Source of the DNA: Ginglymostoma cirratum
Lineage: Eukaryota
Direction of reading: 5' to 3'
DNA length: 64,000 nt
Assembly (NCBI GenBank): GCA_024137785.1
Contig: JAHRHZ010000108.1
Span: 2,758,855 to 2,822,854 of the forward strand
The translations under genes were made by a program, and so were the position numbers. The stretch's first letter is position 1. Each line of letters starts with the position of its first letter. Below are positions 5,201 to 59,110 of the stretch, in pieces. The notes under the pieces are model-generated. The model was not told the origin of the DNA. It worked only from the letters and a program-made list of their open reading frames with translations, and ran no database searches.

Positions 5201-8200
5201 ATAAAGTTACATAGTTACACTTAACATTATAGCTCTTTAAGAAGGCTGACAAATAAGGGGGCAGCTTCTCCTATATTTGACCCTGGGAGATCATACACTG
5301 TGTCTCTGTTTTGCAGCTGAACTTTATGACCCCCACTATTGTTTGCATGCTGTAAATTGGTCTTAAACCAGAAGGTTAATTCTCGATAAACCTTACCGTC
5401 TCTATCCTAAGCCAAGTCTTTTTACTAAATAAGACAGCGTCTCTTCAAATTCCATTAGTGAGGTTGAAATTCAGTCATTGCCACCTTTCCATTGATCTTT
5501 GGATGCAAGGATTCGCACTTGAGCTGCAATTGTTTATTTTCCATGTTTTACAACCTCTTTTGCTCTCTTTGGTAGTTGTCTGTTTACACCATTTGTCACT
5601 CCATCTTCATTGCGAGGGGGCCTCTTTTCATTATTTAAGGTTGGCTACTCATAAAAACTTGACTAAATCCCCACCTGGATGTTTGTGGGTTGCATTTCAC
5701 AATACTCATATGGGTATGTTTAACATGTAATGAAAATTACCTGACGAGTCTAGATCATTGTGGGATCATACATATCTTTTGATTCTCTGTAGACTACAAC
5801 CTTCAGGCTGGTTATTAATAGGCATCACTTCATAGAATCCCTACCAGGTGGGAGCAGGTAACACTGATCCTCCGAAGAGCATCCCACCCAGACCCATCCC
5901 ATCCCTGCAACCCTGCATTTCCCAAGGCTAATCTACTTAACCTACACATCCCTGCTTACTACAGGCAACTTAGCATGGCCAGTCCACCTAATCCACACAT
6001 CTTCGGAAACTGAAGGAGACCCACACAGACACAAGGAGGATGTACAAACTCCACACACACAGTCGCCCGAGGGTGGGATCGAACACAGGTATGTGGCACT
6101 GTGAGGCAGCAGTGTAGGAATCTGTACAGTGCGGAAGCAGACCATTCGACCCGTCGAGTCTACATTGAGCCTCCAAAGAGCTACCAGCTCCACCACCCCT
6201 CGCCTATCCCACAAACCCTTTATCTAGGATTTTCAAGGATGTTTTCTATCAGAAATTCACGTGTGTTAAAGCTGCCTGTCGACAGAAATTGTATTAAATT
6301 CATTAATGTCTAATATATCAAAACTAAAACCACCATTATTATTGTATGAATATATATATTTGTGTGTAATTATTTATGTAATTTACAACTGCCTGAAAAT
6401 GTTTTAGTTAATTCGGTCCCGTTTCCCCCTCTACTCTGTATTAAATTGAACTTTTACATCAACTGGCTACAAAGGTTTGCATCTGTGCCTCCCTTATAAA
6501 AGATGCCTGACTACACTCCCCTGTCTTCTCTCTTTTATTTTCTCATCCAGGGCCTCTGTATGGAGGCCACAAGTCTGGGTGTGAACATCTGCTATAGGTA
6601 ACTCAACCCCTTTTGGCCATCTCTAAAAGCTCTGGGCTGCCATTTTGCCATCTTTACTCATAGGCCATTACAACAGCATGAAACACGAGCTAAATGAAAA
6701 CCGAAAGAACTGTGGATGCTGCAAATCAGGAATAAAAATAGAAGTTTCTGGAAAAGCTCAGCAGGTCTGGCAGCATTAACTCTGATTTTATTTCTTCACA
6801 GATGCTACAAGACCTGCTGAGCCTTTTCAGCAATCTGTGCTTTTGTTCATGAAACACAAGCTCCTTTACAATTGGGTTTAGAGACAGAAAGAACAACAGG
6901 AATGCTGGAAATGAGCTGCCAAAACTGAGATTGACTGAAAGTGTTTAAATTTGCAGTTTGATAATGACTGTGGATATTACAGTCTGATGATTTAAAATGT
7001 TATGTGCCATTCCTGATGCTCATAACGCAAAGCTATAACAAAACCAACTAGCATTTGTATTGAATTATTCATGCAGTAAACCTCCCTAGGTGCTTCACCG
7101 ATAGCCAGAAGCTCAGCTGAAGAGGTCAATTTTAAGCAGCATCTTAAAAGAGGAGATTTAAGGAGGGAATCCAGAGCTCAGGGACTTGGTGGCTGAAAGC
7201 ACTTCACTAATGGTGGTTTGATTAATATGTGAGATAAGAATGGGTCAGAACTGGAGGAGAGCAGCGAGCTTGGAACATCTTACAGCTGCAGGATGATCTG
7301 GAGATGGTCACGGAGAGAATGGTTGCTTTCTTGCAACACCGCTCTGAAATGCATTCATGTGGACAATGATCAAGGCAGCGCAGGAGATGTCTGCTCCTTA
7401 AACAGGATGACAGACACTGTATCTCTGGCCTTAAAAGAAGCCACTTGATCTGCAGCAAGCCGGCAGAGCCAAAGTCATGATGTCATTTTTTATTCATGTA
7501 TGGGTTGTGGATGAATCCTGGCTTGGTCAGCATTTACTGCCCATCCCTAATTGCCCAGAGGGCAGTTAAGAGTCAACCACATTGCTGTGGGTCTGGAGTT
7601 ACATGTAGGCCAGACCAGGTAAGGATTGGCAGTTTCCTTCCCCAAAAGACATCAGTGAACCAGATGGGTTTTTCCAACATAATTGACACTACATGGTCAT
7701 CATTAGACTCTTAATTCCAGACATTTTGTTTGTTGATTTCAAATTCCACAATCTGGCATGGTGGGATTCAAACCCAGTTCCCCTGAACGTTATCTGGCTG
7801 TCTGGATTAACAGTCCAGTGATAATACTAGCAGGCCCAGGATAGGATAGGAAGGGAAAAAGGAAAGGAGGAAGGGAAGGGAAGAAGGAGCCACAAATGTA
7901 TTGTCATCTCGAGGTTCCTGTATGGTGGCTCTGGTACAGTTTTTGTGCTTGCATTCTGACACACCTATCATGGTACCAATGCCAATGAGTTGTTACCACT
8001 GTTGTTCTTAGTGAATTACCACAGTGCAAATGTAGACTTGTTTGGCCACTGGTAAACAACAAGAATGGGAGAATTTTCAACAGCGATACATTATCAGAGA
8101 GCATTGAACTATTGAATGAATCCTGAATGAGTTCATTTCATTAATGTAACGAAAGGACATCATTACAGATGGGTATCTAAGCATTGTCATATTTGCCGCT

Positions 8201-24236: not shown

Positions 24237-25437
24237 AACTGATCAGGAATGATACTTGTCCTAGTCTAAACACTAGGCAATCAACTCTGTCCATATGTTA
24301 CAGAATAATTCCTGCAAGTTCAACTCAGAAATAGTGAAAAACCTAGTCATCAGCATTTGAACCTGCGCAGAGCAACCCAAACATATTTCTAACTCATTGC
24401 CACGACAACTGGCACCTGACAACAGGCTTTGAATTTGCACTAACATTTTTGGTATAATATTAGTGACTTGTTACATCAGATACAAAGTATAACTCACTGC
24501 ACCTTTCAGTGTCAGCCACCCAGTCTTTTCCTCAGTCACTTGCAATGTCTGCACTCCCCCATTTTTCTGACTGCTAAAAGGCAAGAATACACTGTCGACT
24601 TCTCCATCACTCAAGAAATGCATCAAATTGCATGGTCTCCTGTGGTAGCATTGGAACTCACGCCTCCAACAAGAAACAAGCCTAAATCCAATGCCCTAGA
24701 CTGCAGAGCCATGCTAACTGAGTGACTTGTATTGTCAAAACCCTTGACTGATATTGGCACTGAGTTAGAATGTAAACTATGAACAGGGCCCCATTCCTCA
24801 TGCCTTTAAGATGTTCTTCTTTCACAATGGATTTGATGCACTGTAGGTGACTGTGACATCTCCATCACTTATTGTCCATCCCCAGGTGCCCCTGAGTAGA
24901 TGCTGAGTGGCATTTTCATGTAAATTGATGACTTGTTATTTCTCCTTGTCCAACAGTCCTTCTTAAGGTCGATCTCAGACCTTCCCTGCTGCTTGATTTA
25001 CAAAGTGACTCTTGCCTTTATGATCAGAAGATTTTGCAGATACTCAGCAGCTCAGGAGGTACCTGTTGATACAGGAACAGAGGTAATGTTTGAGCTCAAT
25101 TACCCTCCATCAGAACTGTGGAAAGTGAGAGATCTTAGAGGTTTCAAACAAATTCTCAGAGAGGGAAAGGGGAGAGGAGGAAAGAAGAAAAAAAGCAAGC
25201 TCCTTGATAGGTGGAAGACTGGAGAGATTCAATATCAAAAGGGAAAATCGTGAATGACAGAAGGAGATGAGAATGGAAGAAAAAAATTAACACAGGTTGA
25301 TTGAAATATTCTGGACCAATGAGCTCCCTCTGCTGTGGAGAGAGATAAAAGGTACTGCAGATGCTGGAGAATCTGAGATAACAAGCGTGGGGCTGGATGA
25401 ACACAGCAGGTCAAGCAGCATCATAGGAGCAGGAAAA

Positions 25438-25471
25438 CTTGACATTTCGGGCCTAGACCCTTCATCAGAAA
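25438..25471 (-). ncRNA. Hammerhead ribozyme motif at the 3' terminus of the long PLE
   Basis: Minus strand TTT CTGATGA A GGGTCTAGGCCC GAAA TGTC AAG; same strand as the PLE ORF. Confidence 0.65.
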
Positions 25472-25723
25472 TGGGGGAGGGGAAGAGGGTTCTGAAATAA
25501 ATAGGGAGAAAGGGGGAGGCAGATAGAGGATGTACAGAGGAGAGGATAGGTGGAGAGGAGGCAGACAAGTCAAAGAGGTGGGGATGCAGCCAGTAAAGGT
25601 GAGTGTAGGTAGCGGAGTAGGGAGGAGATAGGTCAGTCCAGGGAGGACGGACAGGTCAAGGGGGCGGGATGATGTTAGTAGACAGGAGATGGGGGTGGGG
25701 CTTGAGGTGGGAGGAGGGGATAG

Positions 25724-25823
25724 NNNNNNNNNNNNNNNNNNNNNNNNNNNNNNNNNNNNNNNNNNNNNNNNNNNNNNNNNNNNNNNNNNNNNNNNNNNNN
25801 NNNNNNNNNNNNNNNNNNNNNNN
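25724..25823. other. Assembly gap (100 N placeholder)
   Basis: Run of N. Confidence 1.
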
Positions 25824-28769
25824 TGCGGTTGGGGGAGGGGAGATTTTGACGCTTGTGAAATCCACATTGATACCATTGAGCTGCAGGGTTCCCAGGCTGA
25901 ATATGATTTGCTGTTCCTGCAGCCTTAGGGTGGCATCACTGTGGCATTGTAGGAGGCCCAGGATGGACATGTCATCTGAGGAATGGGAGGGGGAGTTGAA
26001 ATGGTTCGCGACTGGGAGGTGCAGTTGCTGTTGCGAACTGAGCGCAGGTGTTCTGCAAAGTGGTCCCCAAGCCTCTGCTTGGTTTCCCCAATGTAGAGGA
26101 AGCCACAACGGGTACAGCGGATGCAGTATACCACATTGGCAGATGTGCAGGTGAACATCTGCCTGATGTGGAAAGTCTTCTTGGGGCCTGGGATTGGGGT
26201 GAGGGAGGAGGTGTGGGGGCAGGTGTAGCACTTCCTGCGGTTACAGGGAAAAGTGCCAGGTGTGGTGGGGCTGGAGGGGAGTGTGGAGCGGACAAGGGAG
26301 TCGCGGAGGGAGTGGTCCTTCCAGAAGGCAAATAAGGGTGGGGAGGGAAAAATGTCTTTGGTGGTGGGGTCTGATTGCAGATGGCGGAAGTGTCGGAGGA
26401 TGACGTGTTGGATCCGGAGGTTGGTGGGGTGGTACGTGAGGACGAGGGGGATTCTTTTTTGGTTATTATTGCGGGGATGGGGCATGAGGGATGTGTTACG
26501 GGAAATGTGGGAGACACGGTCGAGGGCGTTCTCGACTACTGTGGGGGGGAAGTTGTGGTCCTTGAAGAATGAGGACATCTGAGATGTACGGGAGTGGAAT
26601 GTCTCATCCTGGGAGCAGATGCGGTGGAGGCGAAGGAATTGGGAATAGGGGATGGCATTTTTGCAGGAAGGTGGGTGGGAGGTGGTGTATTCCAGGTAGC
26701 CGTGGGAGTCAGTGGGCTTGAAATGGACATCGGTTTCTGGGTGGTTACCCGAGATGGAGACAGAGAGGTCCAGAAAGGAGAGAGAAGTGTTGGAGATAGT
26801 CCAGGTGAACTTCAGGTTGGAGTGGAAGGTGTTGGTGAAGTGGATGAACTGTTCGAGCTCCTCATGGGAGCACGCGGTGGCGCCGATGCAGTCATCAATG
26901 TAACGGAAGAAGAGGTGGGGTTTAGGGCCAGTGTAGGTATGGAAGAGGGATTATTCCACATAACCTACAAAGAGGCAGGCATAGCTTGGGCCCATGCGGG
27001 TACCCATGGCCACCCCCTTTGTCTGTAGGAAGTGGAAGGAATTGAAAGAAAAGTTGTTGAGGGTGAGGACGAGTTCGGCTAAGCGAATGAGGGTGTCGGT
27101 GGAGGGGGATTGGTCAGTTCTGCGGGACAGGAAGAAGCGGAGGGCCTTTAGGCCATCTGCATGGGGAATACAGGTGTATAGGGACTGGATGTCCATAGTA
27201 AAAATGAGGTGTTGGGGACCGGGGAATTGGAAGTTCTGGAGGAGGTGGAGGGCGTGGGTAGGTAGGGAGTTCCTGGACCAAGGGGGTGAAAATGGAGTCT
27301 AGGTAGGTGGAGATGAGTTCGGTGGGGCAGGAGCAGGCGGAGACAATGGGTCGACCAGGGCATTCAGGTTTGTGGATTTTGGGAAGGAGTCGACCAGGGC
27401 ATTCAGGTTTGTGGGTTTTGGGAAGGATCGACCAGGGCATTCAGGTTTTTTCCCTCTGCTGTGGGAACGTTTTACTTCCTAGTTCACTCCCAGAACATTT
27501 CTGTTCCACAGTGACAACGCAATCCTTAGCCTCCGTTACTGTGAATAAACATTTCATTGAACAAAACATTACAGTCCACGTAAGCAGAAGGAAAAAAAAC
27601 GAAAATACTTGCTACTTGGATGATGTTCAGGGGTAATTCATTAGTTTATTTTCCGTAGCCTTCTGAACCTGTTCATTATGGTCTGGATCCTTTCTAACGG
27701 GGGTCCAACACCGTTCTTCCCATTCTTATGTCTCCCACTCTATCCTTCAATAATTATTTACTATTATTATGTTTGAAGAACAACTTACAATTTATTTTCG
27801 CACAGCCTGCCATCTTTTCCTTATGCGTCCTCTCAGCTTTCCTTATTTCAGCCTTAGCCTCTCTCCAGTCGGTTTCTCAATGTTAAAATGAAATCTGTAT
27901 TACAAAGCTGTTCTGCCGATATTTTCATAAAGAAGGCGTTCAGGAGTTGCCAAAAAGAACTGAAGGGAAAGGATGTGGCATGTTCTATTCAACAAAACGT
28001 TATAGATCGTCATTTATTATTGTATGTGCACACTTCACGTCTATAAACGTAGATAACACAGTGTGGAGCTGGAAGAACACAGCAGGTCAGGCAGCATCGA
28101 AGGAGCAGGAAAGCTGACGTTTCGGATCGGGACCCTTCTTTAGGAAAGGAAAACGTCTATACGTCTGTAAATGTGTCCTGCTTCAACTTGCATTTATGAG
28201 AGCATTACCCCTCGCCCTCCTATGTCTGGTCTTGACGATTCCGAAATATTCATGGCTTTTGTCTCATCTTTTATGCTCGAAAATCAACGTAATCTAAAAC
28301 TCTTCTTCCAAGGGCACAATCGAAGATTATTTTGGGTTTCCCATTCCCTCTCACCCGCTGCGCTTCCCGCCTAAGAAACACCTCCATGTAAAAAGAAAAT
28401 CCATCTTTTCAAATCATGAAGTGGCCTTGTCCCTCTCTATGTCAGTATTCCATTCCTGTTATACATCTATCCGATGTGTCAATGCTGCAATCAATTAATC
28501 ATTGCACCACCCACTGTGGCCCTTCATTCAGCTGTAAAGCCTCTGGGACCTCTGGGATTCCACCTGTAAATATTATCGTCTGTCCATTTACCTGTCCTCT
28601 TTGTGACCCACCATCTTTATAAATCCAATCAGGTGAAGAAGCATGTTACCACCCGCCATAGCACGCATTTAAATTTCACTCAAGGTTCAGGTTAGAGTAA
28701 CCCGCCCTGTAATAACATATTCTGAAATCGACTGCTATTCCCGGATGTAAAGGTGGAAAAACTACGTTT

Positions 28770-28945: not shown

Positions 28946-28960
28946 ATCGCAAGATATGCG

Positions 28961-29614
28961 AGATAACAAGGTGTGGAGCTGGATGAACACAGCAGACCAA
29001 GCAGCATCATAGGAGCAGAGTCGCGAACCATTTCAACTCCCCCTCCCATTCCTCAGATGATATGTCCACCCTGGGCCTCCTGCAATGCCACAGCGATGCC
29101 ACCCGAAGGCTGCAGGAACATATTCAGCCTGAGAACCCCACAGCCCAATGGTATCAATGTGGATTTCACAAGCTTCAAATTCTCCCCTCCCCAACCACAT
29201 CCCGAAACCAGCCCAGCTCCTCCCCGCCTCCCTAACCTGTTCTTCCTCTCACCTATGCCCTCCTCCTACCTCAAGCCCCACCCCCATCTCCTATCTACTA
29301 ACCTCATCCCGCCCCCTTGACCTGTCCTTCCTCCCTGGACTGACCTATCTACTCCCTACCCCCCACCTACACTCACCTTTACTGGCTCCATCCCCGCCTC
29401 TTTGACCTGTCTGTCTCCTCTATCCATCTTCTATCCGCCTCCCCCCTCTCCCTATTTATTTCAGAACCCTCTTCCCCTCCCCCTTTTCTGATGAAGGGTC
29501 TAGGCTCGAAACGTCAGCCTTCCTGCTCCTCTGATGCTGCTTGGCCTGCTGTGTTCATCCAGCTCTACACCTTGTTATCTCGGATTCTCCAGCATCTGCA
29601 GTACCTATTATCTC
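28961..29614 (+). mobile_element. Short PLE family A copy: inverted 5' arm, GIY-YIG C-terminal remnant and hammerhead terminus
   Basis: 15-bp TSD ATCGCAAGATATGCG (28946-28960) / ATCACAAGATATGCG (29615-29629). Confidence 0.88.
29485..29518 (+). ncRNA. Hammerhead ribozyme motif (family A)
   Basis: TTT CTGATGA A GGGTCTAGGCTC GAAA CGTC AG. Confidence 0.65.
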
Positions 29615-30767
29615 ATCACAAGATATGCGTATCTTTTCATGATCACGTTAACAGTTTGGGGCTGCTTGATTTGTAAATATGTTTGACCACGTTTCCGACA
29701 TCACAACAATGACTAGACTTTTAAAAATCACTTTCCACCGTAAAAACATATTAGGACGTGGGATGGTCGGAAGAGGCTCCATGCTGTTGGTTTTCACGTT
29801 CCAAATCCCCGTGATAGTCAAGATGTTCTTTCGCATTCAAATCGAGTCTCAATTAGTCCACTGAATATTTTACGTTTTCCATCCAAAATATTTTCCTCTT
29901 TGCACTTCGATCTGACTTAATTTATTTTATTCATGTTTTCAATGACACAAAACCTAATTGACATTTATGACAACAACCAAAGAAAATTGAACGAGGGTGT
30001 GAACATTTGTTTTCACCAATACTTGAAGAGACTGGAACGTCTTTTAAGGATCTTCTTTATCAACAGTCATTTATTTTCAGTTGGATCAGTTAGAGGTGAG
30101 AAACTGCCGTTGGAACCGGAAATGCACCTGTCTCGTACTCACTCACCCTTGAACCACAATCGTCACTGTCACCTTACAGCAGCAGCGAGAAACTCCTCCT
30201 AACGAGCTGGTATCAACGTAACATCAAAATTTTTAAAATAGATACTCACGTTATGGTTTACTTTTTTCCCTCCCTGGCGGAAAACTTATATGCAACGTAG
30301 TGAACAGTTCCATCCTTATCTAAAACCAAGTTACAGGTATTAAGTCCCAGAGAGAGGAAGAATAAAAACTGACTGAAACACCCATTTTCACGAGCAGATG
30401 GTAACTGACAATGTAACGGAAATCTCCAGGCAAACAAAACTGTGTAATGCATGGCCATTGTTTACCTCCTGTGAAATCCATACAGAAAACCAGCAGCCTT
30501 GATGCCTGGCACGCATCTAACGCAAAGAAAAGCATGATTTCATAGGTGCAAAATGTTTCCTGCAAGAAAGCAATTTCCACTTCATTGCTCTGTTAAATTA
30601 TGCAACAAGGTTCTGGAGTTTTCTTGTCATTTAAATAAAAATAAGAAGGAACACTTTTAACTGCTTTTCATGATCGTTGTAACTTTATAGTTGCGCCGAG
30701 TACTGCCGGGGGGGTAAAAACGAAGAAAAACTAGGTGCAGGAGGAGGCAGTTCAGCAAATTGAACCT

Positions 30768-30929
30768 GGAAAGCTTGACGTTTCGGGCCTAGACCCTTTA
30801 TCTGAAGAAGGGTCTAGGTCCGAAACGTCAAGCTTTCCTGCTCCTATGATGCTGCTTGGCCTGCTGTGTTCATCCAGCTCTACATCTTGTTATCTCGGAT
30901 TCTCCAGCATCTGCAGTTCCTATTATCTC
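30768..30929 (+). mobile_element. Hairpin mini-PLE family A
   Basis: Inverted arms meet at about 30800; intact CTGAAGA..GAAACGTC core; TSD CAGCAAATT(T)GAACCT. Confidence 0.85.
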
Positions 30930-31913
30930 AGCAAATTTGAACCTGCTCTGCTATTTGATCCAATCAAGGCTGAGCTTATCTCAGCCTCCACTTTTGTACC
31001 GCACCCCATAAACACTTTAACCATTACAAATTAAAAATCTGTCTATCTCCTCCTGAAGTTAACTCAATGTCCTGTCGTCCGTCGCACGCTGGAGTAAGTG
31101 AAGATTCGCGACCCTCTTTGAAAGAAGTAATTGCTCCACAACTCCGCTTTAAATCTCCTACCCTTGTTATAAAGTTTCCATTACAATTTTAATTAGCCCT
31201 CGTTCCCAGTAATGCTGTTGGAACATTGACGTTGCCATTAGTTGGAGGTTGTTGCTCTACACATATCCCCCAAAGCAGTGAGCATTGTGGCACCTGAGCG
31301 TGGATATTGAGAAAAGAGATAGTAGGAACTGCCGATGCTGGAGAATCTGAGATAACAAGGTGTAGAGCTGGATGAACACAGCAGGCCAAGCAGCATCAGA
31401 GGAGCAGGAAAACTGACATTTCGGGTCTGGACCCTTCTTCGGAGGACCCATGTCCTTCGAGACGAAATTTCAGCGATTATCTTGGGCCAGTTTCTACTCG
31501 TCACTTGTTTCATAGCAGTTAGTAGAAGCTACAATGAATTCATTCGCCATTAGTTCCATGCTTGCGGTACTTAATACAGGTAGTTAGCTATTCGGGCTAT
31601 CGATTTTAGACCATTTGTGAAAAGCACCAGATTTCTAAAAAGTGTTTTGTTTGTGACTTTGATTTTCGTTTATTACTGGTCGTGGTCAGAGAATCTCTGC
31701 GAAGCAATGATTTACGAAAGGGACTCGGGCAGAAGGAAGCATTGTAACTTTCGACTGCAACTATAGCACCATTTTTCTTCCGCTGATTGTGGACCCAATA
31801 TGGAGCATCCAACCAGAGGTATAGAATTAAAGATTGTCCTGCTGGGAGCCCTTTAGTGTCCTTCATCCCTTTAGTGCTAGGTGCTTAGAATGGTGTCTTC
31901 AGTTTAATAGTGT

Positions 31914-39380: not shown

Positions 39381-40308
39381 TCCTCTGCTATGAGTATTCT
39401 GTATTTTGAGTCAAATAACTGACGACGTTAGTCGAACTTTGGACATGGATGATGGAAATCGGGTGATATTCAATAGCCCTCTTTATGTCTGTCCAGACGA
39501 AACGTTATATCGATCCCGAAGCAAATTAAAACCGGGCTATGTCTAGATTGTCGCCAGTTCGTTACTGGATAATCTGTGCGTACGCCAATTATTAGCAGTT
39601 AACTGGTGTCGTTCCCCAGAACCTGCATTCGGGGCCTTAGGGTTTCACTGGATTTTTAAACGATACAGGAAAACTGCTCGAAGCAGGGAAGAGCATTTCA
39701 GCTACATCAAATATGTACTTAGATGTCATGCTGAGCCTTGTATTCTCTCCGGGGACGTTCCTGGGGAAGTTATGCCCTGACTTTGGAAGCATTATTTAGA
39801 CAAGTAAAGCGGCTCGTTTCATGTGAGTTTATACCGACTCGCATGAAACGAGCTTTTGGTTCAGTCCGTTAACCCATGCATTTGCTGAGATTTTTAAATA
39901 GAACATAGAACAGCACAGCACAGAAACGGACCCCCCGGCCCACGATGTTGTGCTAAACATGACGCCAAATTAAACTAAACCCTTCTGCCTGCCCTTGGTC
40001 CATACCCCTCCATACCTTGCATTTTCATGGGCTTATGTAAAAATTCCTTAAACTTCCTATCGCATCTGCCTCCACCACCGCCCCCTGGCAGTGCTTTCCA
40101 GACTCCTACCACTCCCTGTATTAAAACAAAAACTTGTCTCTCACATCTCCTTTTAACTTCCCCCCTTCATCTTAAATGCGTGCCCCTGCTATTAGAATTA
40201 TTATGGGTACCATGCAATGAAGTGGAAGTTTGGATAGGACGCACGCAGAGTCACTGGTTCTCCGACACGGCAATGCAAAACAATGTGTAAGACAATAAGG
40301 TCATTCAG

Positions 40309-40582
40309 AGATAATAGGAACTGCAGATGCTGGAGAATCTGAGATAACAAGGTGTGGAGCTGGATGAACACAGCAGGCCGAGCAGCATCATAGGAGCAGG
40401 AAAGCTTAGCATCATAGGAGCAGGAAAGCTTAGCTTCATAGGAGCAGGAAAGCTTAGCATCATAGGAGCAGGAAAGCTGAGCATCATAGGATTAGGAAAG
40501 CTTAGCTTCATAGGAGCAGGAAAGCTTAGCTATGATGCTGCTTGGCCTGCTGTGTTCATCCAACTCCACACCTTGTTACCTC
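40309..40582 (-). mobile_element. Hairpin mini-PLE family A with internal 6x 24-bp tandem repeat
   Basis: TSD AAGGTCATTCAG (40297-40308 / 40583-40594); six AGCATCATAGGAGCAGGAAAGCTT-type units at 40384-40527. Confidence 0.9.
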
Positions 40583-41945
40583 AAGGTCATTCAGCCATTA
40601 TCTCTCTTTGGGAGGAAGACTTGTGAACATCTCGAATTATTTCGCCAGCAGAGACTGTGGTGGTATTATATCACTCCACTTGTCAATGTCAATATCAGTA
40701 GATAATTTTCATTTGTAACTTTGCAGGGTATTACTAAACAGAGTAATGGTTAGAATGCGAAGCATATGTATCACGATCAGGTCCATCAACTCATTTTGAA
40801 ATTTCAAATCACCAGAACATTTACAGGTAGTTTGGAAAGAGTTACAACCTAATATTGCTCACAACTGAATGAGAAATCTTCCTCATTTTATTCTGTAAAG
40901 TGTGATTTGGTTGTGTCATGACGAGTAGTAGCAGTCCATTAGGGAGTTCTTACGATGGACAAGATGTGAAGTCATGCTATCAACTGCTGTTCAGTTGAGA
41001 TTCTGATAGAAATAACCCATAGATAGAGCGTTTCCGTTTCTCTGAAATGGTCATGACTCTTTGGAACCTTCCTGAATAACATGGTTAAAGCAGTGTTCTT
41101 GAATATGTTAAAGAAAGAGAGAGACGTATTCTTGATACGGAGGTGTTGAGTTTTATCGGGATTGAAGAGAATGTGGATAATCAGACCATCCATTATTTAT
41201 TAAATTTTGGAGAAGGCTCAACCAGCCAGGTGGCGAACTTCTGCTCCAATTGGAATGTCTGTATGCATGAAAGACAGTAGCCGCATTGAACTGAACAAAA
41301 AATTCCGTTGAAAGTAATCCTACTAAATCGAAACCTGTCAACTCGAAAAATAAGTAAGCAGGACCAGACATGTACACAGGCGTTTAGCTGCTCTGTGGTA
41401 GATTGATCATCGCTGAATGTGCTCGTTCTGAACTGATTAAGACCACACTGAATGTAATCGACCCAAACTGCGCGTTAAAAACAGAATGGACCTTACCGAA
41501 GGCCAGGCAGCATCAGAGAGGAGCAGGAAAACTGACGTTTCGAGAAGGGGTCCCGGCCCGAAACGTCAGCTTTCCTGCTCCTCTGATGCTGCCTGGCCTG
41601 CTGTGTTCATCCAGCTCCACACTGTGTTACCTCCAGCCCAGTCCCCCATTCCCACACATTGGTTGGACTATGACCTGGCGTCGTGTGACGTCTTGACTCT
41701 GACCGAATATTGATATGGAGTGATAAGTTGACTGCATTTTCTGTGGGGAGGAAAGAATCAGAGGCAAACTTTGGCCTGAAATTATACCCGTAGTTTAAAT
41801 ATGACCGGGATCAGTCTTCAGTCTGTGTGTATTTCACATCAGAGCCAGGTGAAACGTGTGATTTTTGTCAAAATACAAATGTCATCTGAGCAACAGCTGC
41901 AATACTGTTTGCTACAATCAAAATAATGTACAACATTGAACAAAG

Positions 41946-53290: not shown

Positions 53291-54581
53291 TTTGTTAAAT
53301 CATCCATTAATGAGGAAACATCTTTCATTGGCCCAGAGATTTTCATTTATTTAATTTTGCATTCTGGCATGTTCTCCTACTGTCACACTCTACAAGCTCT
53401 GTGGTCAACCATTTTGCAAATCACAAAGAAACATTAGTACAATTGCAAAAATATAATGCCTTCATAATTTTTGATATTGAGCAAAGATGTCATTACGATC
53501 ATATCATCAATCAGCAAACGACTTTCACAGTTCTGCTGCGCATTGTACGGAATTCATCAGGCTTGGAAAGGTAATCAGCATGGAACATTTAGAAATTCTG
53601 TCTGACACATCAGATGAACTTCAGTGGATTGTTCAGTTTCACAAGTAGTTTAAATTAATTAATTGTTATGTCCCTGATTAAACCAGATATGTGGGAATTT
53701 AAATAAAAGATTAACTGATTGGCTCGATCAACACAGTGCTTTAAGTGTCTTCAGTCCATCTATTTTAAAGATGTACAGTTATGGCTTCCAACAACATGAG
53801 TCCCTCTTTAGGATGCAACTGGTTATGTGCTCGCAGTTAGATTCTAAATTAAACCTTCATGGAAAATACTGCTGGTAATATAGAAAATGCCTTAAGTACC
53901 CATGACTTCAGAAATATGCAAAGATTACAAGCTTGAGGAAGGCAGTATCTAGAGGACAGTAGAACATTTTCTTCATTTAAAAATATGAAAATGTATTATT
54001 TATTTTAATGTACGTGACTGAATATCTCTATGTAACAATGGGAAGTATATTGCTCACGTTTGTTCAGTGCCATGATCATAAATTTAGACCTTAGTAAAGT
54101 CGTGAAATACCCGGCAGAAACACATTTTCATTTGTTGCACATTTTTTTATTATTCTTCACTACAACCTGGTGAACAAGGAAATTAATTTACAACAACAAA
54201 ACAAACCCGACACTAAATAATCTTAATTTAATCAACATGAATGCGTTTCCACAATGGGATTCTGTTCTGATTATCACAGTCCGTTCAAAATCTCCAAAGT
54301 TCAGGAGAAGTTTGCAGAATATCAAAAATTAGTTTTGAGATCGAGACATTTCCTACTGAGCTGAACTCAGATTGTTGAAATAACCCTCCTTAATGATTCT
54401 GTGAATTACTTTGAATTATTAAGTTTATTAAAGTCAATAACACATGTTCAATGTGAAAATATTTTTCATTCTCATGAATTCTTACTCTCTGGCTCCACTC
54501 TTGTTCTGAAAATTAAGTTACAATGAATCTTTAACATTTGACTTGATAGATTGTACAGATCCATAAGCTGGGAACAAGACT

Positions 54582-54705
54582 ATTTCAGAACCCTCTGCCC
54601 CTCCCCCATTTCTGATGAAGGGTCTAGGCCCGAAACGTCAAGCTTTCCTGCTCCTATGATGCTGCTTGGCCTGCTGTGTTCATCCAGCCCCACGCCTTGT
54701 TATCT
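54582..54705 (+). mobile_element. Solo PLE family A terminus
   Basis: TSD AACAAGACT (54573-54581 / 54707-54715). Confidence 0.85.
54609..54642 (+). ncRNA. Minimal type I hammerhead ribozyme motif (PLE family A), best-conserved copy
   Basis: UUU-CUGAUGA-A-GGGU(CUAG)GCCC-GAAA-CGUC^AAG: core boxes, stem II, palindromic ACGU stem III and short stem I. Predicted cut after 54639. Confidence 0.75.
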
Positions 54706-55840
54706 TAACAAGACTGTCGTACTGTTTGTGTCTGCGCTATTGCCGTCAGTGTTGTCAGGACTTTGACATCAGGAACCTGCCTGAATGGCTGTAAACCTTT
54801 CATTTCTGTCTCCTGCATCTCAGCGACTTTATTTGTCATTGCACAAACACTTTTACCTGACGGGCAGCACGGTGGCTCAGTGGTTAGCACTGCTGCCTCA
54901 CAGCACCAGGGACCCGGGTTTGATTCCAGCCTCAGGCAACAGTCTGTATGGAGCTTGCACATACTCCCCATGACTGCGTGGGTTCCTTCTGGGTGCTCCG
55001 GTCTCCACACTGTGGGGACTCTATGATCATTCTATAAATGACCTTTGACCAAGTGCAAATCTGACCAAAAATGAGATCCCTGGTCAAATTGTAACAATAA
55101 TCTGCAGGAGTTTTGATTAGTTGTTAGAAGTAATAAATCTACCTTGGGGTTGCTTGATTAAGCAAGACAGAATTGTGTATTTAATCTGTGACCTGGCATG
55201 TTTAGTGGCACAATGTAGAAACCTAAGCTACACTTGCTATTTGAAAACCTATTGCAGACTCTTAATATTACTGACAAGGGGCAACGTATACCTCAAATGT
55301 ATTCATGCATTTCAACCATAGCAGGCCATTTAGCGTAGAGCAATTAGAAAGGGAGTTCCACTCGTGTGATCCAGTGGCCCCAAATTTACAGTAACATAGC
55401 TCCCAGTTGGGCTGGTTTATGTCCAGGGGTGAAACGTTACAGTGATCATGCTTCCCGTGCAAATTCTATCCTTGTCCTCCTAGGTGGTAGAGTTTTTATA
55501 TTTCGAAGGCATCAAAGAAATCTTGAGTAATTGTTGAAATGTAACTTTCATAGCGCAGAATTTGCACGGGAGCATTGGTGTTGCAAGGGATTGATGAATA
55601 ATATAGCCGAATGTGCATCAAACAGATGGGCTGAATTATGCTAGATAGTATCGAGCTCATTCTCTTCAGGGGTCTTGTGGTGCAGCGGTAGCCTAAAGTG
55701 TCACACACTGACAGGAACGTAGGAGCATAAACAAAGGAGTCAGGTATTCAGCCTGAGTCACTTAGTCTATAATGGACATTTATCTTGGGACAGCAGCTGG
55801 GAGACAGGAGGGACACAGTGACCGATACATTTACAAATCT

Positions 55841-56737
55841 AGGAGCAAATTACTGCAGATACTGGAATCTGTCCTGAAAACAAAACTTCTGTAAGTCACT
55901 GGCAGTCAGGCAGCATCTGAGGAGAGAGAGCAAGCTAACATTTCCAGTCTCGATGACTCTACATCAGACTTTTTGGCAAACTCCTTGCCAGACATCAGCA
56001 GTGAAATGGAAAGCAAGGTGAAAGAGGCAATTGGAATTGCTGTCAGATGGAAAAGCAAAACTTCTTCAGGGTGGGCATTCCTCGATTAGTCAGTCGATTA
56101 AACACAATGTCGGAGCAAACTACTGCAGATGGTGGAACCCGAACTGAAAAAAAAACCCGCTGGAAATCACAGAGGGTCAGGCAGCATCCGTGAAGAGAGA
56201 TGAAGCTAATGTTTCAGGTACAGATGGCTCTTCATTGGCCCCAAGACTGCTCCCCATAGCCGGTCATTTTAAAGCAGCATCCTGCTCATGTGCCCACTTG
56301 TCTGTCCTCGGCATGCCGCAATGCTCCAACGAATCACAGCACCAACAGGAGGAAGAACATCTCATCTTCAAACTGGGCACTTTACTACCTTCCTGACTTA
56401 ATATTGAATTCAACATCTTCAAATTGTGAACTCATTCCCATTTCTTCCCTTCCTTTCAGTTTCATTTGTTACATTCGCTGTCACCATGTCCTCTGTCTCC
56501 TCCCTCCACTTTAGTGGGACCATCTATTCTTTCCATCTTAACAGTTAGACATGCCATTGTTCTGCCACTCTCACTGTTTTATCAGCACCCTTTCTCCACC
56601 AGCACTCCAACCCCGCATGATCGCACAAATATGCTTCATGTCAGCTCTGACAGAGCATCATCTAGACTCAAAACAGTAGTTTACTCTGTCTCCACGGATG
56701 CTGCTTAACCCGCTGTAATTTTCAGCATTTCTTGTCT
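55841..56737. mobile_element. PLE family C copies (55841-55970; 56113-56737 with GIY-YIG C-terminal remnant); another at 35318-35480
   Basis: HLIFKLGTLLP*LNIEF GIY-YIG tail; degenerate CTGA..GAGTC..GACTC..AAA cores; inverted termini. Confidence 0.7.
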
Positions 56738-56739
56738 TA

Positions 56740-57152
56740 AAGCCTATAAATCTAGTGCAGTGCGGATTTGGGCCTAGTCATTACAGGGTTCTTGGTTTTC
56801 AGCAGCAGCTGCTGGGAGGTGGAGAGGGACGCAGTACGTAGTAAGCCCGTAAATATGGGTAGGTATGGATTCGGGCCTAGGCTTTACTGGGTTCTTAACT
56901 TGGGGCAGCAATAGCAGCTGGGAGGCAGGAAGGGACGCAGTAACTGGTAAGCCTATAAATCCAGCGTGGTAGGGATTTAGGCCTAGCCTTGATAGGGCAC
57001 TTTTCTCAGTGCAGCAGCAGCTGAGAGGCAGGGAGGAACACAGCAAATGGGAAGCCTGTAAGTCTAGCACGGGATGGATTCGGGCCTAGTTTTACAGGTC
57101 ACTTATCTTGGAACAGCCAGAGGTGGGAAGGGAAATAGTGACTGGTAAGCCC
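56740..57152 (+). repeat. Degenerate tandem repeat, about 95-106 bp x4, directly 5' of the CR1 remnant
   Basis: Units start at AAGCC (56740, 56843, 56949, 57052, 57147) and share GGATT.GGGCCTAG and CAGCTG(G)GAGG. A further partial unit lies at about 55750-55842. Confidence 0.8.
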
Positions 57153-57154
57153 TG

Positions 57155-59110
57155 TGATGTGGCAAAGGTTAGTGGGAAACTAGAGGATTGGGAAATCTTT
57201 AAAGGTCAATAGAAAGCCATGAGTGAAGTTATAAAGAGAGGTAAGATGGTTTATGAGAGTAAACTAGCTCAGAATATAAAAACAGATAGAAAAGGTTTCC
57301 ACAGATATAAAAAACAAAAAAGAAAAAGTGGCTAAGGTAAACTTTGGTCCTTTGCAGGATGAGAGGGGGATTTAATAATGGGAAATGAGGAAATTGCTGA
57401 GGCATTGAACGGGTAGCGTCTGTCGGTCTTCACAGCAGAACACACAAATAATATGTCAAAAGTTGATGATAAGGAGGATACGGCTGGTGAGGACCTCGAA
57501 ATGATCATTACCACTAAAGAGTAATGTTAGGTAAGCTAATGGGGCTGAAGGTAGAAAAGCCTCCTGGTCCTGATTGATTGCATCGCAGGGTATTAAACAA
57601 GATGGCAGGGGAAATAGCAAATGCGCTTGTGGTAATTTACCAAACTTCACTGGTCTCTGGGGCGGTTCCGGCAGATTGGAAAACATCGAATGTGATGCCA
57701 CTGTTTAAAAAAAAGAGGTAGACAAAAGGCGGGTAACTCTAGGCCCGTTAGGTCAACTTCTGCAGAGGGCAAAATGCGTGACTCTATAATAAAGGAAGAA
57801 ATAGCGAGACATCTGCATAGATGCAGATCTATCATGCAGACCCACCATGGGATCATGAAAGGCAGGTCACATTTAACTAATTTGCTGGAATCCTTTGAGG
57901 ACATTCCAGGCACAGTGGGCTACAGGGAACCGGTGGATTTGGATTTCCAGAAGGCATTCGACAAAGTGCCACACAAAAGGCTGCTGCATTAGATAAAAGT
58001 GCACGGCATTGCCAGTAATGTATCAACATGGGTAGAAGATTGGATAACTAACAGAGCACAAAAAGTAGGGACAAATAATTGTTTTTTGGTTGGCGATCAG
58101 TGGCTAGTAGTGTGCTGCAGCTATCTACAATTTACATAGGTGATGTGGAGTTGGGGACCAAGCGTGGCGTGTCAAAGTTTGCAGATGACACTAAAATGAG
58201 TGGTCGAGCAAAGTGTGCAGAGGTCACTGAAAGCCTACAGAGGGATACAGATAGGTTAATTGAGTGGGCAAAGGTCTGCCAGGTGGAGTATAATGTTGGT
58301 AAATGTGAGGTCATCCATTTTGGTAGGAATAACAGCAAAATGGACTATTATTTAAATGGTGAAAAATTGCAGCATGCTGCTCTGCAGAGGGACTTGAGTG
58401 TCCTCATACATGAATCACAAAAAGTTGGCTTGCAGATGCAGCAGGATATTAAGAAGGAAAATGAAACATTGTCCTTCATTGCTAGAGGGATGGAGTTTAA
58501 AAATAGGAAGGTTATGTTGCAGCTGCATAGGGTGCTGGTGAGGCCAAACCTGGAGTACCGCGGGGATAATAGGAACTGCAGATGCTGGAGAATCCGAGAT
58601 AACAAGGTGTGGAGCTGCATGAACACAGCAGGCCAAGCAGCATCATAGGAGCAGGAAAGCTTGACGTTTCAGGCCTGGACCCTTCATCAGAAATTTTCAG
58701 GCCCGACACGTCAAGCTTTCCTGCTCCTCTGATGCTGCTTGGCCTGCTGTGTTCATCCAGCTCCACACCTTGTTATCCTGGAGTACTGCGGACAGTTTTG
58801 GTCTTTTTATTTGAGAAAGGATGTAATGACACTAGGGACGTTGCAGAAGAGGTTTACTAGATTGATTTCAGAGCTGAGAGGATTGGCTTGTGAGGAAGGA
58901 TTGAGTAAACTGAGACTATGCACATTAGAATTTAGAAGAATGAGGGGGGATTTTATAGAAATGTATAAAATTATGAAGACAATAGACAAGATAGAAACCA
59001 GTGAAGCAGTTGAGGCTACCTCATTAAATATTTTTAAGGCATAGGTCGAGTTTTGAACAGTAAAGGAATTAAAGGTTATGGTGAATAGGCAGGTAAGTGG
59101 ATCATAGTTT
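57155..59110 (+). mobile_element. CR1-clade LINE ORF2 remnant (RT)
   Basis: SHLTNLL, LDFQKAFDKVPH, KFADDTK, RPNLEYC and RRMRGD motifs, with frameshifts. Confidence 0.9.
58564..58776 (-). mobile_element. Hairpin mini-PLE family A inserted in a CR1 RT remnant
   Basis: Long inverted arms; 15-bp TSD CCTGGAGTACCGCGG / CCTGGAGTACTGCGG interrupts the CR1 RPNLEYC frame. Confidence 0.9.

What the first reader, a model, noticed from the sequence alone, without database searches (positions are those of the whole stretch)
40309..40582. 24-bp tandem array whose units end exactly at the predicted ribozyme cleavage site
Seen: the copy reads through the family A terminus and stops at ...GGAGCAGGAAAGCTT. Those last 24 nt occur six times (40384-40527, with a few substitutions) before the inverted arm, and the whole is bounded by a 12-bp TSD. 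In intact copies the hammerhead is predicted to cut GUC^AAGCUUUCCUGCUCC, so the 3' product starts AAGCUU; its cDNA would end at precisely this AAGCTT, and no hammerhead core is present in this copy. Inference: this is a genomic fossil of reverse transcription of a self-cleaved RNA, with RT repeatedly reaching the cleaved 5' end and re-priming 24 nt back (telomerase-like reiteration; PLE RTs are related to TERT). The family B hairpin junction at about 6777 also lies within 1 nt of its predicted cut (GUU^AACUCUG).
Basis: partly seen in the sequence, partly recalled or inferred. Interest (0 to 1): 0.8.

Follow-up and report, generated by a model that had tools for sequence, protein, structure and literature searches.

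The report
Retroelement copy stuttered at ribozyme cut
A short shark Penelope-type retroelement insertion ends exactly where its own hammerhead ribozyme should cut the RNA and repeats the last 24 letters six times. This is a possible fossil of the copying enzyme running off a self-cut RNA and restarting, but it rests on one locus plus one supporting locus.

Summary
Window 40309-40582 is a two-armed insertion of Penelope-like element (PLE) family A with a 12-bp TSD and no hammerhead (HHR) core. Its long arm ends at ...GGAAAGCTT, and the last 24 nt occur six times (40384-40527). In intact copies AAGCTT is followed by GACGTTTCGG. The complement reads CUGAUGA-A-GGGUCUAGGCCC-GAAACGUC^AAGCUU, a PLE-type minimal hammerhead. 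The unit boundary is unambiguous and falls on the predicted cut.

For:
- A second PLE insertion in this window (25339-27450) ends in a private 39-nt x2.6 reiteration against its TSD, with no hairpin and no hammerhead nearby.
- Two of the three arrays with period 20-60 abut PLE 5' junctions (P about 1e-4).
- The 24-nt unit starts at the best internal mimic of the element's normal reverse-transcription start site.

Against:
- Only 1 of 19 family A arms ends at +1. One family B arm is ambiguous. Most arms end at -24 to -40.
- No base-pairing guides re-priming.
- A T variant shared by units 3 and 6 hints at DNA-level duplication.
- Ribozyme activity is untested.
- No reads of this species were found.

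The scan had already noted hammerhead-bearing Penelope mini-insertions on other pieces of this genome, but not this array. Composite confidence is about 0.45.

The parts
40297..40308 (.). Target-site duplication, copy 1 (AAGGTCATTCAG).
   Evidence: Identical 12-mer at 40583-40594. The bases outside it differ on both sides.
40309..40340 (-). The 'tail': about 32-34 nt that lie between the element's two RT start sites. It is present on the left arm only.
   Evidence: Family A copies end either at +99/100 (GAGATAATAGG...) or at +65/66 (GAGATAACAAGG...). This matches the optional 30-40 bp PLE tail described in PMC11167929 and PMC8557442.
40309..40407 (-). Left arm, which includes the tail listed above. 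RNA positions +100 to +1, written in cDNA sense on the + strand. It ends at ...GGAAAGCTT, which is RNA position +1.
   Evidence: 94% identical to the long family A copy over +1..+99. The arm stops where intact copies continue with GACGTTTCGG.
40384..40527 (-). Six head-to-tail 24-nt units, each a copy of RNA +24..+1. Unit 1 is the end of the left arm.
   Evidence: TRF period 24, 6.1 copies. Units are listed, with 5 substitutions in 144 nt. Unit position 4 is T in units 3 and 6.
40384..40394 (-). Unit start AGCATCATAGG, the best internal mimic of the canonical tail start AGATAATAGGA. Proposed pseudo-start site for re-initiation.
   Evidence: In an anchored alignment scan it is the top non-self hit in the arm. 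In the 385-nt long copy it ties for top score with that copy's own tail start. It outranks the second canonical start site.
40528..40529 (.). AG: either a 2-nt filler or the first bases of a seventh unit.
   Evidence: The left arm would be followed by G. The right arm would be preceded by TC. Neither is present.
40530..40582 (+). Inverted right arm, RNA +15 to +66. It begins at the no-tail RT start site.
   Evidence: 50 of 53 positions are complementary to the left arm. Its outer end lies at the same position as the no-tail ends of other copies.
40583..40594 (.). Target-site duplication, copy 2.
54612..54639 (+). Reference intact minimal hammerhead of family A (CTGATGAAGGGTCTAGGCCCGAAACGTC). 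The predicted cut lies between 54639 and 54640.
   Evidence: Motif scan. The core is conserved across families A, B and C. 82.5% of structure cells are paired, against 5-52% when the partners are slid. The copy 54583-54706 has a 9-bp TSD, and a related species carries the empty site.
27350..27448 (-). Second example: a 39-nt unit x2.6 at the 5' junction of a 2.1-kb 5'-truncated PLE copy (25339-27450). The last unit is partial (21 nt). TT filler and then the TSD follow.
   Evidence: TRF and sequence. TSD TCCCTCTGCTGTGG at 25325-25338 and 27451-27464. All 12 homologous proteins have a single [19 protein letters not shown] unit.
6776..6777 (.). Family B hairpin junction. The left arm ends at +22. 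The right arm starts (T)AACTCTG.
   Evidence: The position relative to GUU^AAC is ambiguous: -1, or +1 with a filler.

Best explanation
Anatomy (shown). The insert is a head-to-head double-arm insertion of the 3' end of a shark Penelope-like element. Both staggered target nicks primed cDNA synthesis, one at the tail start site (+100) and one at the no-tail start site (+66). This gave two arms and a 12-bp TSD.

Mechanism (inferred).
1. The left cDNA ran to a physical RNA 5' end at +1, created by self-cleavage of the element's minimal hammerhead (GUC^AAGCUU).
2. The joining template jump did not follow at once. Instead the RT used the cDNA 3' end as a non-homologous primer. It re-initiated on the same RNA at a sequence 24 nt from the end that mimics its normal start site (RNA CCUAUGAUGCU compared with CCUAUUAUCU).
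3. It ran off again, about six times in all.
4. The strand was finally joined to the 3' end of the other arm's cDNA at +15.
5. Some units may have been added or converted later at the DNA level.

Sub-claim probabilities: reiteration made at integration, about 0.6. The 5' end at +1 was made by the hammerhead, about 0.55.
For: - The unit boundary coincides exactly and unambiguously with the predicted cut.
- All six units end at the same nucleotide, which suggests a hard stop.
- Both arms start at the two canonical termini shared by at least 17 copies. In vitro, the one PLE enzyme tested so far (Anolis PAc) cleaves and extends both strands and initiates internally without primer homology (PMC11167929).
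- A second, unrelated PLE insertion in the window has a private 39-nt x2.6 terminal reiteration with a partial last unit and 2-nt filler against its TSD. It lies away from any hairpin or hammerhead, and homologues have one unit.
- Two of the three arrays of period 20-60 in 64 kb abut PLE 5' junctions, P about 1.3e-4.
- The unit start is the top-ranked internal look-alike of the tail start site.
- Neither array has junctional microhomology, unless the AG after unit 6 is counted as filler, which gives a 3-nt AGC repeat (see evidence against).
- Three of the 4 variant events in the units lie within 4 nt of unit junctions.
- Unit divergence (3.5%) is similar to arm divergence (3/53), so the array is about as old as the insertion.
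- Contigs of a related species show recurrent head-to-head joints between -31 and 54641. That position is +1/+2 within alignment ambiguity.
- Precedent: R2 5' junctions carry tandem duplications whose length matches the ribozyme cut (PMC3774820).
Against: - Only 1 of 19 family A arms ends at +1, and 1 family B arm is ambiguous. Chance of at least one is about 0.1-0.27.
- The common 5' end is at -24 to -40, so most templates were uncut.
- Rfam models do not detect the hammerhead.
- Helix I is only 2-3 bp and there is no covariation.
- For Anolis PAc, cleavage was dispensable in vitro and no RNA-seq reads ended at the cut.
- The cDNA end cannot pair at +25.
- T at unit position 4 in units 3 and 6 and at the junction (AGCT) suggests a 72-bp duplication or slippage from the junction.
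- An AGC trinucleotide 24 nt apart could seed slippage.
- The start-site mimic was noticed post hoc. At the 39-nt array the best mimic lies 9 nt before the restart, not at it.
- The assembly could not be checked with reads of this species.
Confidence: 0.45

Rival explanations
1. Post-insertion minisatellite. The insertion originally read ...AAGCTT-AG-CTATG... with one unit. Replication slippage between the AGC at the unit start and the AGC formed by the filler plus the first base of the right arm duplicated 24 bp. The array then grew by further slippage or unequal exchange at an unstable hairpin apex. Whether the arm ended at +1 by cleavage or by chance is a separate question.
For: - A 3-nt AGC direct repeat lies 24 nt apart.
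- T at unit position 4 in units 3 and 6 matches the junction AGCT. This is as expected if a nascent strand slipped back from the junction.
- The two 72-bp halves differ at 3 of 72 positions. Adjacent units differ by 1.8 of 24 on average.
- Chance of two independent identical changes is about 0.08 (own calculation).
Against: - The second array (27350-27448) has a partial last unit against the TSD and no hairpin. It cannot arise by slippage from a single-copy original.
- The association of arrays with PLE 5' junctions has P about 1e-4.
- The units are as diverged as the arms, so no recent turnover is visible.
- The unit start coincides with the start-site mimic.
Confidence: 0.3
2. The reiteration was made at integration, but the stop at +1 is unrelated to ribozyme cleavage. 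The RNA was broken or degraded there by chance, or the RT stalled at the folded or protein-bound hammerhead. Alternatively a repair polymerase rather than the PLE RT did the re-copying.
For: - The 39-nt array marks a hard stop at an arbitrary ORF position.
- Arm ends at +7, +9, +15, -9, -14 and -18 show scattered ends around the cut.
- PAc hammerhead cleavage is not needed in vitro.
Against: - The chance that the one short arm bearing an array stops exactly at +1 is about 1/60-1/100.
- A structural stall would be expected at helix II or III, not after a 2-3 bp helix I.
- Recurrent joints at +1/+2 occur in a related species.
Confidence: 0.2
3. Assembly artefact: the array is a mis-assembled or collapsed repeat.
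For: No reads of this species could be laid. The best runs held at most 0.19 of the words. PLE tandem and inverted structures are known to trouble assemblies (PMC8557442).
Against: The units carry private substitutions. The flanks and the TSD are clean. The structure is only 274 bp and is internally consistent.
Confidence: 0.03

Closest known systems
Standard Penelope-like element insertion architecture: 5'-truncated copy, adjacent inverted 5'-truncated copy, optional 30-40 bp tail, variable TSD, hammerhead in the pLTR (PMC8557442, PMC3846280, PMC11167929, PMC4209133)
   Same: Two arms head to head, a tail on one arm only, two alternative termini 34 nt apart, TSDs of 9-14 bp, a minimal hammerhead about 100 nt from the 3' end, and a GIY..CxxC..YIG endonuclease in the long copy.
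   Different: In the papers I read, I found no report of a short tandem reiteration of the cDNA terminus, nor of an arm end placed on the hammerhead cut.
R2 elements with an HDV-like ribozyme: the cut position shapes 5' junctions, including tandem duplications whose length matches the cut (PMC3774820)
   Same: A self-cleaving ribozyme sets the RNA 5' end, and the junction carries a tandem repeat phased on that end.
   Different: In R2 the duplicated sequence is upstream 28S target copied once more from the RNA. Here the element's own terminal 24 nt is repeated six times. The ribozyme class (hammerhead) and the RT clade (PLE) also differ.
Telomerase repeat addition (TERT), from general knowledge
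   Same: Iterated copying of a short template segment up to a fixed boundary by an RT of the sister clade.
   Different: There is no realignment homology here, no dedicated template RNA, no chromosome end, and only one or two loci.
Bacterial DRT2 reverse transcriptase, which makes concatemeric cDNA by repeated template jumps (PMC12039810; abstract only, seen)
   Same: Repeated copying of one RNA segment into a tandem cDNA.
   Different: DRT2 is a programmed function on a dedicated ncRNA in prokaryotes. Here the reiteration looks like a by-product of integration.
Non-LTR retrozymes, tandem hammerhead-bearing PLE derivatives (bioRxiv 10.64898/2026.07.22.740005)
   Same: PLE-derived, tandem, and related to hammerhead cleavage.
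   Different: Retrozyme units each carry a complete hammerhead and run from cut to cut. These 24-nt units have no ribozyme.

Membership tests
Penelope-like element (EN+) | [quoted passage not shown] | tested here: met
   The ORF at 25925-26578(-) reads NVVYCIRCTRCGFLYIGETKQRLGDHFAEHLRSV. The Pfam GIY-YIG hit is only E=0.007, below the cut-off, because frameshifts split the domain.
Penelope-like element (EN+) | PLE-type reverse transcriptase | tested here: inconclusive
   RVT_1 E=0.11 on an 81-aa fragment. 138 homologues share [25 protein letters not shown], but none carries an informative name. No PDB relative was found.
Penelope-like element (EN+) | Optional 30-40 bp tail and inverted 5'-truncated copy; variable TSD | tested here: met
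   Termini at +99/100 and +65/66. Hairpin copies at 28960-29616, 30760-30930, 41495-41633 and 58565-58782. TSDs of 9, 10, 12 and 14 bp.
Minimal type I hammerhead of PLEs (Cervera and de la Pena 2014) | [quoted passage not shown] | tested here: met
   CUGAUGA-A-GGGUCUAGGCCC-GAAACGUC in copies at 54612, 29488 and 58690. A CUGAAGA variant is present in others.
Minimal type I hammerhead of PLEs (Cervera and de la Pena 2014) | Helices supported by covariation; detection by curated models | tested here: not met
   No Rfam hit at the gathering threshold or at E<=10. 82.5% of cells are paired, but the covariation score is not above shuffles. Helix I is only 2-3 bp.
Minimal type I hammerhead of PLEs (Cervera and de la Pena 2014) | Self-cleavage after H17 | not testable with these tools
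   Needs an in vitro or in vivo assay.
Telomerase-like repeat addition | The product 3' end realigns by base pairing to the 3' part of the template | tested here: not met
   The cDNA end AAGCTT would have to pair with RNA +25..+30, which reads GCUYGG. Only wobble pairs are possible (sequence).
Slippage-born minisatellite | Direct-repeat microhomology one period apart; variable unit number among alleles | tested here: inconclusive
   A 3-nt AGC is present if AG is filler. Polymorphism could not be tested because no reads of this species were found.
Non-LTR retrozyme | Each tandem unit carries a complete hammerhead | tested here: not met
   The units are 24 nt and lack any core box.

The most novel reading that the evidence does not exclude
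PLE reverse transcriptase, on running off a template 5' end, reuses the cDNA 3' end as a homology-independent primer. It then re-initiates at start-site-like sequences on the RNA. The same step at the canonical start site would explain the long-unexplained tandem pLTR structure of PLEs. The array at 40384-40527 would be the first in vivo footprint that minimal hammerheads of animal PLEs do self-cleave and that the cleaved RNA serves as a retrotransposition template.
Probability: 0.4. Interest if true: 0.8.

Novelty: new variant of a known kind. Interest (0 to 1): 0.6.

Why it matters
The role of hammerheads in Penelope-like elements has been open since 2014 (PMC4209133). The only in vitro system found cleavage dispensable and saw no cleaved ends in RNA-seq (PMC11167929). 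How PLEs build their tandem and inverted structures is also described as undefined (PMC8557442).

A cDNA that stops six times at the predicted cut, together with a second terminal reiteration elsewhere, suggests a concrete and testable mechanism: run-off followed by re-initiation. This shark genome appears to hold on the order of 1e5-1e6 such arms (about 19 family A arms per 64 kb; summed word depth about 5e5 times a single-copy contig in a related species, a rough indicator only). A simple breakpoint histogram could therefore settle whether cleaved RNA is used.

Tried and rejected
- Rfam found no hammerhead at gathering or at E<=10. The only hits were chance miRNA-like matches to the hairpins.
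- Scans of metagenome and prokaryote genome collections found nothing, either for the unit junction or for a general family A pattern.
- No run held this locus (shares <=0.19). Two raw-read runs contained no family A at all.
- The contigs were too short, and too confounded by subfamily variants at the cut, to give a breakpoint histogram.
More copies could therefore not be fetched.
- PDB sequence searches were uninformative.
- RNA folds of the arm were not better than shuffles.
- I looked for head-to-tail junctions (3' end joined to +1 or to -31) in the window and found none.
- I rejected a DNA transposon or MITE reading, because TSD lengths vary from 9 to 14 bp and the copies are 5'-truncated.
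- I rejected a source element that already carried the 39-nt repeat, because 12 of 12 homologues have one unit.
- The N gap at 25724-25823 was left untouched.

Full report
**What is there**

TRF reports one array at 40384-40530: period 24, 6.1 copies, 92% matches. Reading the sequence gives this layout:
- TSD AAGGTCATTCAG at 40297-40308 and 40583-40594.
- Left arm 40309-40407.
- Units 2-6 up to 40527.
- AG at 40528-40529.
- Inverted arm 40530-40582, which matches the left arm at 50 of 53 positions.

The insert contains no CUGAUGA or GAAAC box.

**The family**

The 24-mer occurs in 13 other places in the window, against 0 expected. In every intact copy AAGCTT is followed by GACGTTTCGGGCCTAGACCCTTCATCAG.

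On the other strand this reads CUGAUGA-A-GGGUCUAGGCCC-GAAACGUC^AAGCUU. That sequence has every sequence hallmark of the minimal hammerheads described in PLE pseudo-LTRs. These are the core boxes, the extra base after A9, the G10.1-C11.1 pair, a palindromic ACGU and a short helix I (PMC4209133).

The cores are conserved across three families while the flanks differ. The structure is 82.5% paired, against 5-52% when the partners are slid. There is no covariation and helix I is only 2-3 bp. Rfam does not detect the motif.

Two long copies (25339-27450 and 28960-29616) run into an ORF. Its sequence NVVYCIRCTRCGFLYIGET... shows the GIY..CxxC..YIG signature of PLE endonucleases. It also carries RT fragments with 138 homologues.

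Copies end at either +99/100 or +65/66 relative to the cut. These are the optional tail and the two RT start sites described for PLEs (PMC11167929; PMC8557442).

A contig of a related species carries the empty site of the 54583-54706 copy, with a 9-bp overlap. This confirms that these are true insertions.

**The coincidence**

The repeat junction is unambiguous, because the bases on both sides break the periodicity. It lies exactly after AAGCTT, which is the nucleotide opposite RNA +1.

Among family A arms the 5' ends are as follows:
- Nine at -24 to -35.
- Two long copies.
- One running off the window edge.
- Single arms at -57, -18, -14, -9, +1, +7, +9 and +15.

Families B and C behave alike. 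Their only near-cut case is 6776/6777, where a T makes -1 and +1 indistinguishable.

The window therefore does not show enrichment at NUH+1. The chance of at least one arm at +1 is about 0.1-0.27. Most templates were evidently uncut.

**New evidence for integration-time reiteration**

The long copy 25339-27450 has TSD TCCCTCTGCTGTGG. Its RNA-5' junction carries a 39-nt unit x2.6:
- Two full units.
- A third unit lacking its first base and stopping after 21 nt.
- TT, and then the TSD.

This array lies in the RT ORF, about 2.1 kb from the 3' end, with no hairpin and no hammerhead nearby. All 12 aligned homologues have one [19 protein letters not shown] unit preceded by ..PQPRTARFY. The repeat is therefore private to this copy. 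A partial terminal unit cannot come from slippage on a single-copy original.

My scan finds only three arrays of period 20-60 in the window, and two of them abut PLE 5' junctions, P about 1.3e-4. Reiteration therefore seems tied to 5'-junction formation. Identical unit ends indicate a hard stop of the polymerase: six times at +1, and twice at the ORF site.

**Why 24 nt**

The cDNA end cannot pair at +25, so telomerase-like realignment is not met. However, the one PLE RT tested in vitro initiates on non-homologous primers.

The unit start AGCATCATAGG is the best internal match to the canonical tail start AGATAATAGGA, both in the arm and in a 385-nt long copy. It ranks above the second canonical start. 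This was noticed post hoc. At the 39-nt array the best mimic lies 9 nt before the restart rather than at it. I treat it as a lead.

**Against, and rivals**

- Units 3 and 6 and the junction share T at unit position 4. This favours a 72-bp duplication or slippage from the junction. Two independent identical changes have a chance of about 0.08.
- AGC repeats 24 nt apart could seed slippage.
- Unit divergence (5 of 144) equals arm divergence (3 of 53). Any DNA-level step was therefore early.
- Ribozyme activity is untested. In Anolis, cleavage was dispensable in vitro.
- Reads of this species were not available. Contigs of a related species show recurrent head-to-head joints between -31 and +1/+2, but they cannot give a histogram.

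**Comparison with known systems**

The overall architecture is standard for PLEs. The closest precedent for a ribozyme-phased junction repeat is R2 (PMC3774820).

I found no report of short terminal reiterations in PLEs, or of arm ends placed on the hammerhead cut, in the papers read.

**Verdict**

Composite confidence is 0.45 and interest is 0.6.

Noticed in passing
window 27350-27448 (insertion 25339-27450): A 39-nt x2.6 reiteration at the 5' junction of a 2.1-kb 5'-truncated PLE copy. It duplicates the RT motif [12 protein letters not shown], and homologues have a single unit.
   Followed up: yes
family A/B/C arms, e.g. 28149, 31443, 34246, 36353, 38137, 41538, 58694: About 17 of 31 arms have their RNA-5' end at -24 to -40, just upstream of the CUGAUGA box. 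The typical mini-element is therefore a complete minimal hammerhead plus about 100 nt. Related-species contigs also show recurrent joints at -31/-32 (54608/54609). The cause is unknown; it could be a transcription start or an RT stop.
   Followed up: partly
window 40309-40407 (RNA +19..+25 with +76..+82); the same motifs occur in families B and C: GAUGCUG just downstream of the cut is complementary to CAGCAUC in the tail. Both motifs recur in all three families and could form a stem at the RT start region. The fold is not better than shuffles.
   Followed up: partly
window 54572-54707: A 1.6-kb contig of a related species (about 5% diverged) joins 54572 directly to 54707 with a 9-nt overlap. 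This is the empty site of the 54583-54706 insertion, so that insertion postdates the split.
   Followed up: partly
window 54648-54690, in related-species contigs: There is a high-depth joint from 54690 back to 54648 with TGCAAGCCTCT between (depth about 800-900, roughly 60 copies). It may be an amplified rearranged variant of family A.
   Followed up: no
window 56740-57098: A 103-bp unit x3.5 array starts right after the 3' end of a family C arm (56641-56741). It is unrelated in sequence to the PLE, so the PLE may have inserted next to or into a tandem repeat.
   Followed up: no
window 40393-40309 (- strand) and its homologues in other copies: An AUG-AUG at RNA +17 opens a frame that stays open through the tail (MMLLGLLCSSSSTPCYLRFSSICSSYYL). 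It might be the start of the PLE ORF inside the pLTR, as in other PLEs. This was not tested.
   Followed up: no
window 25724-25823: A 100-N gap lies inside the long PLE copy. It was left untouched.
   Followed up: no
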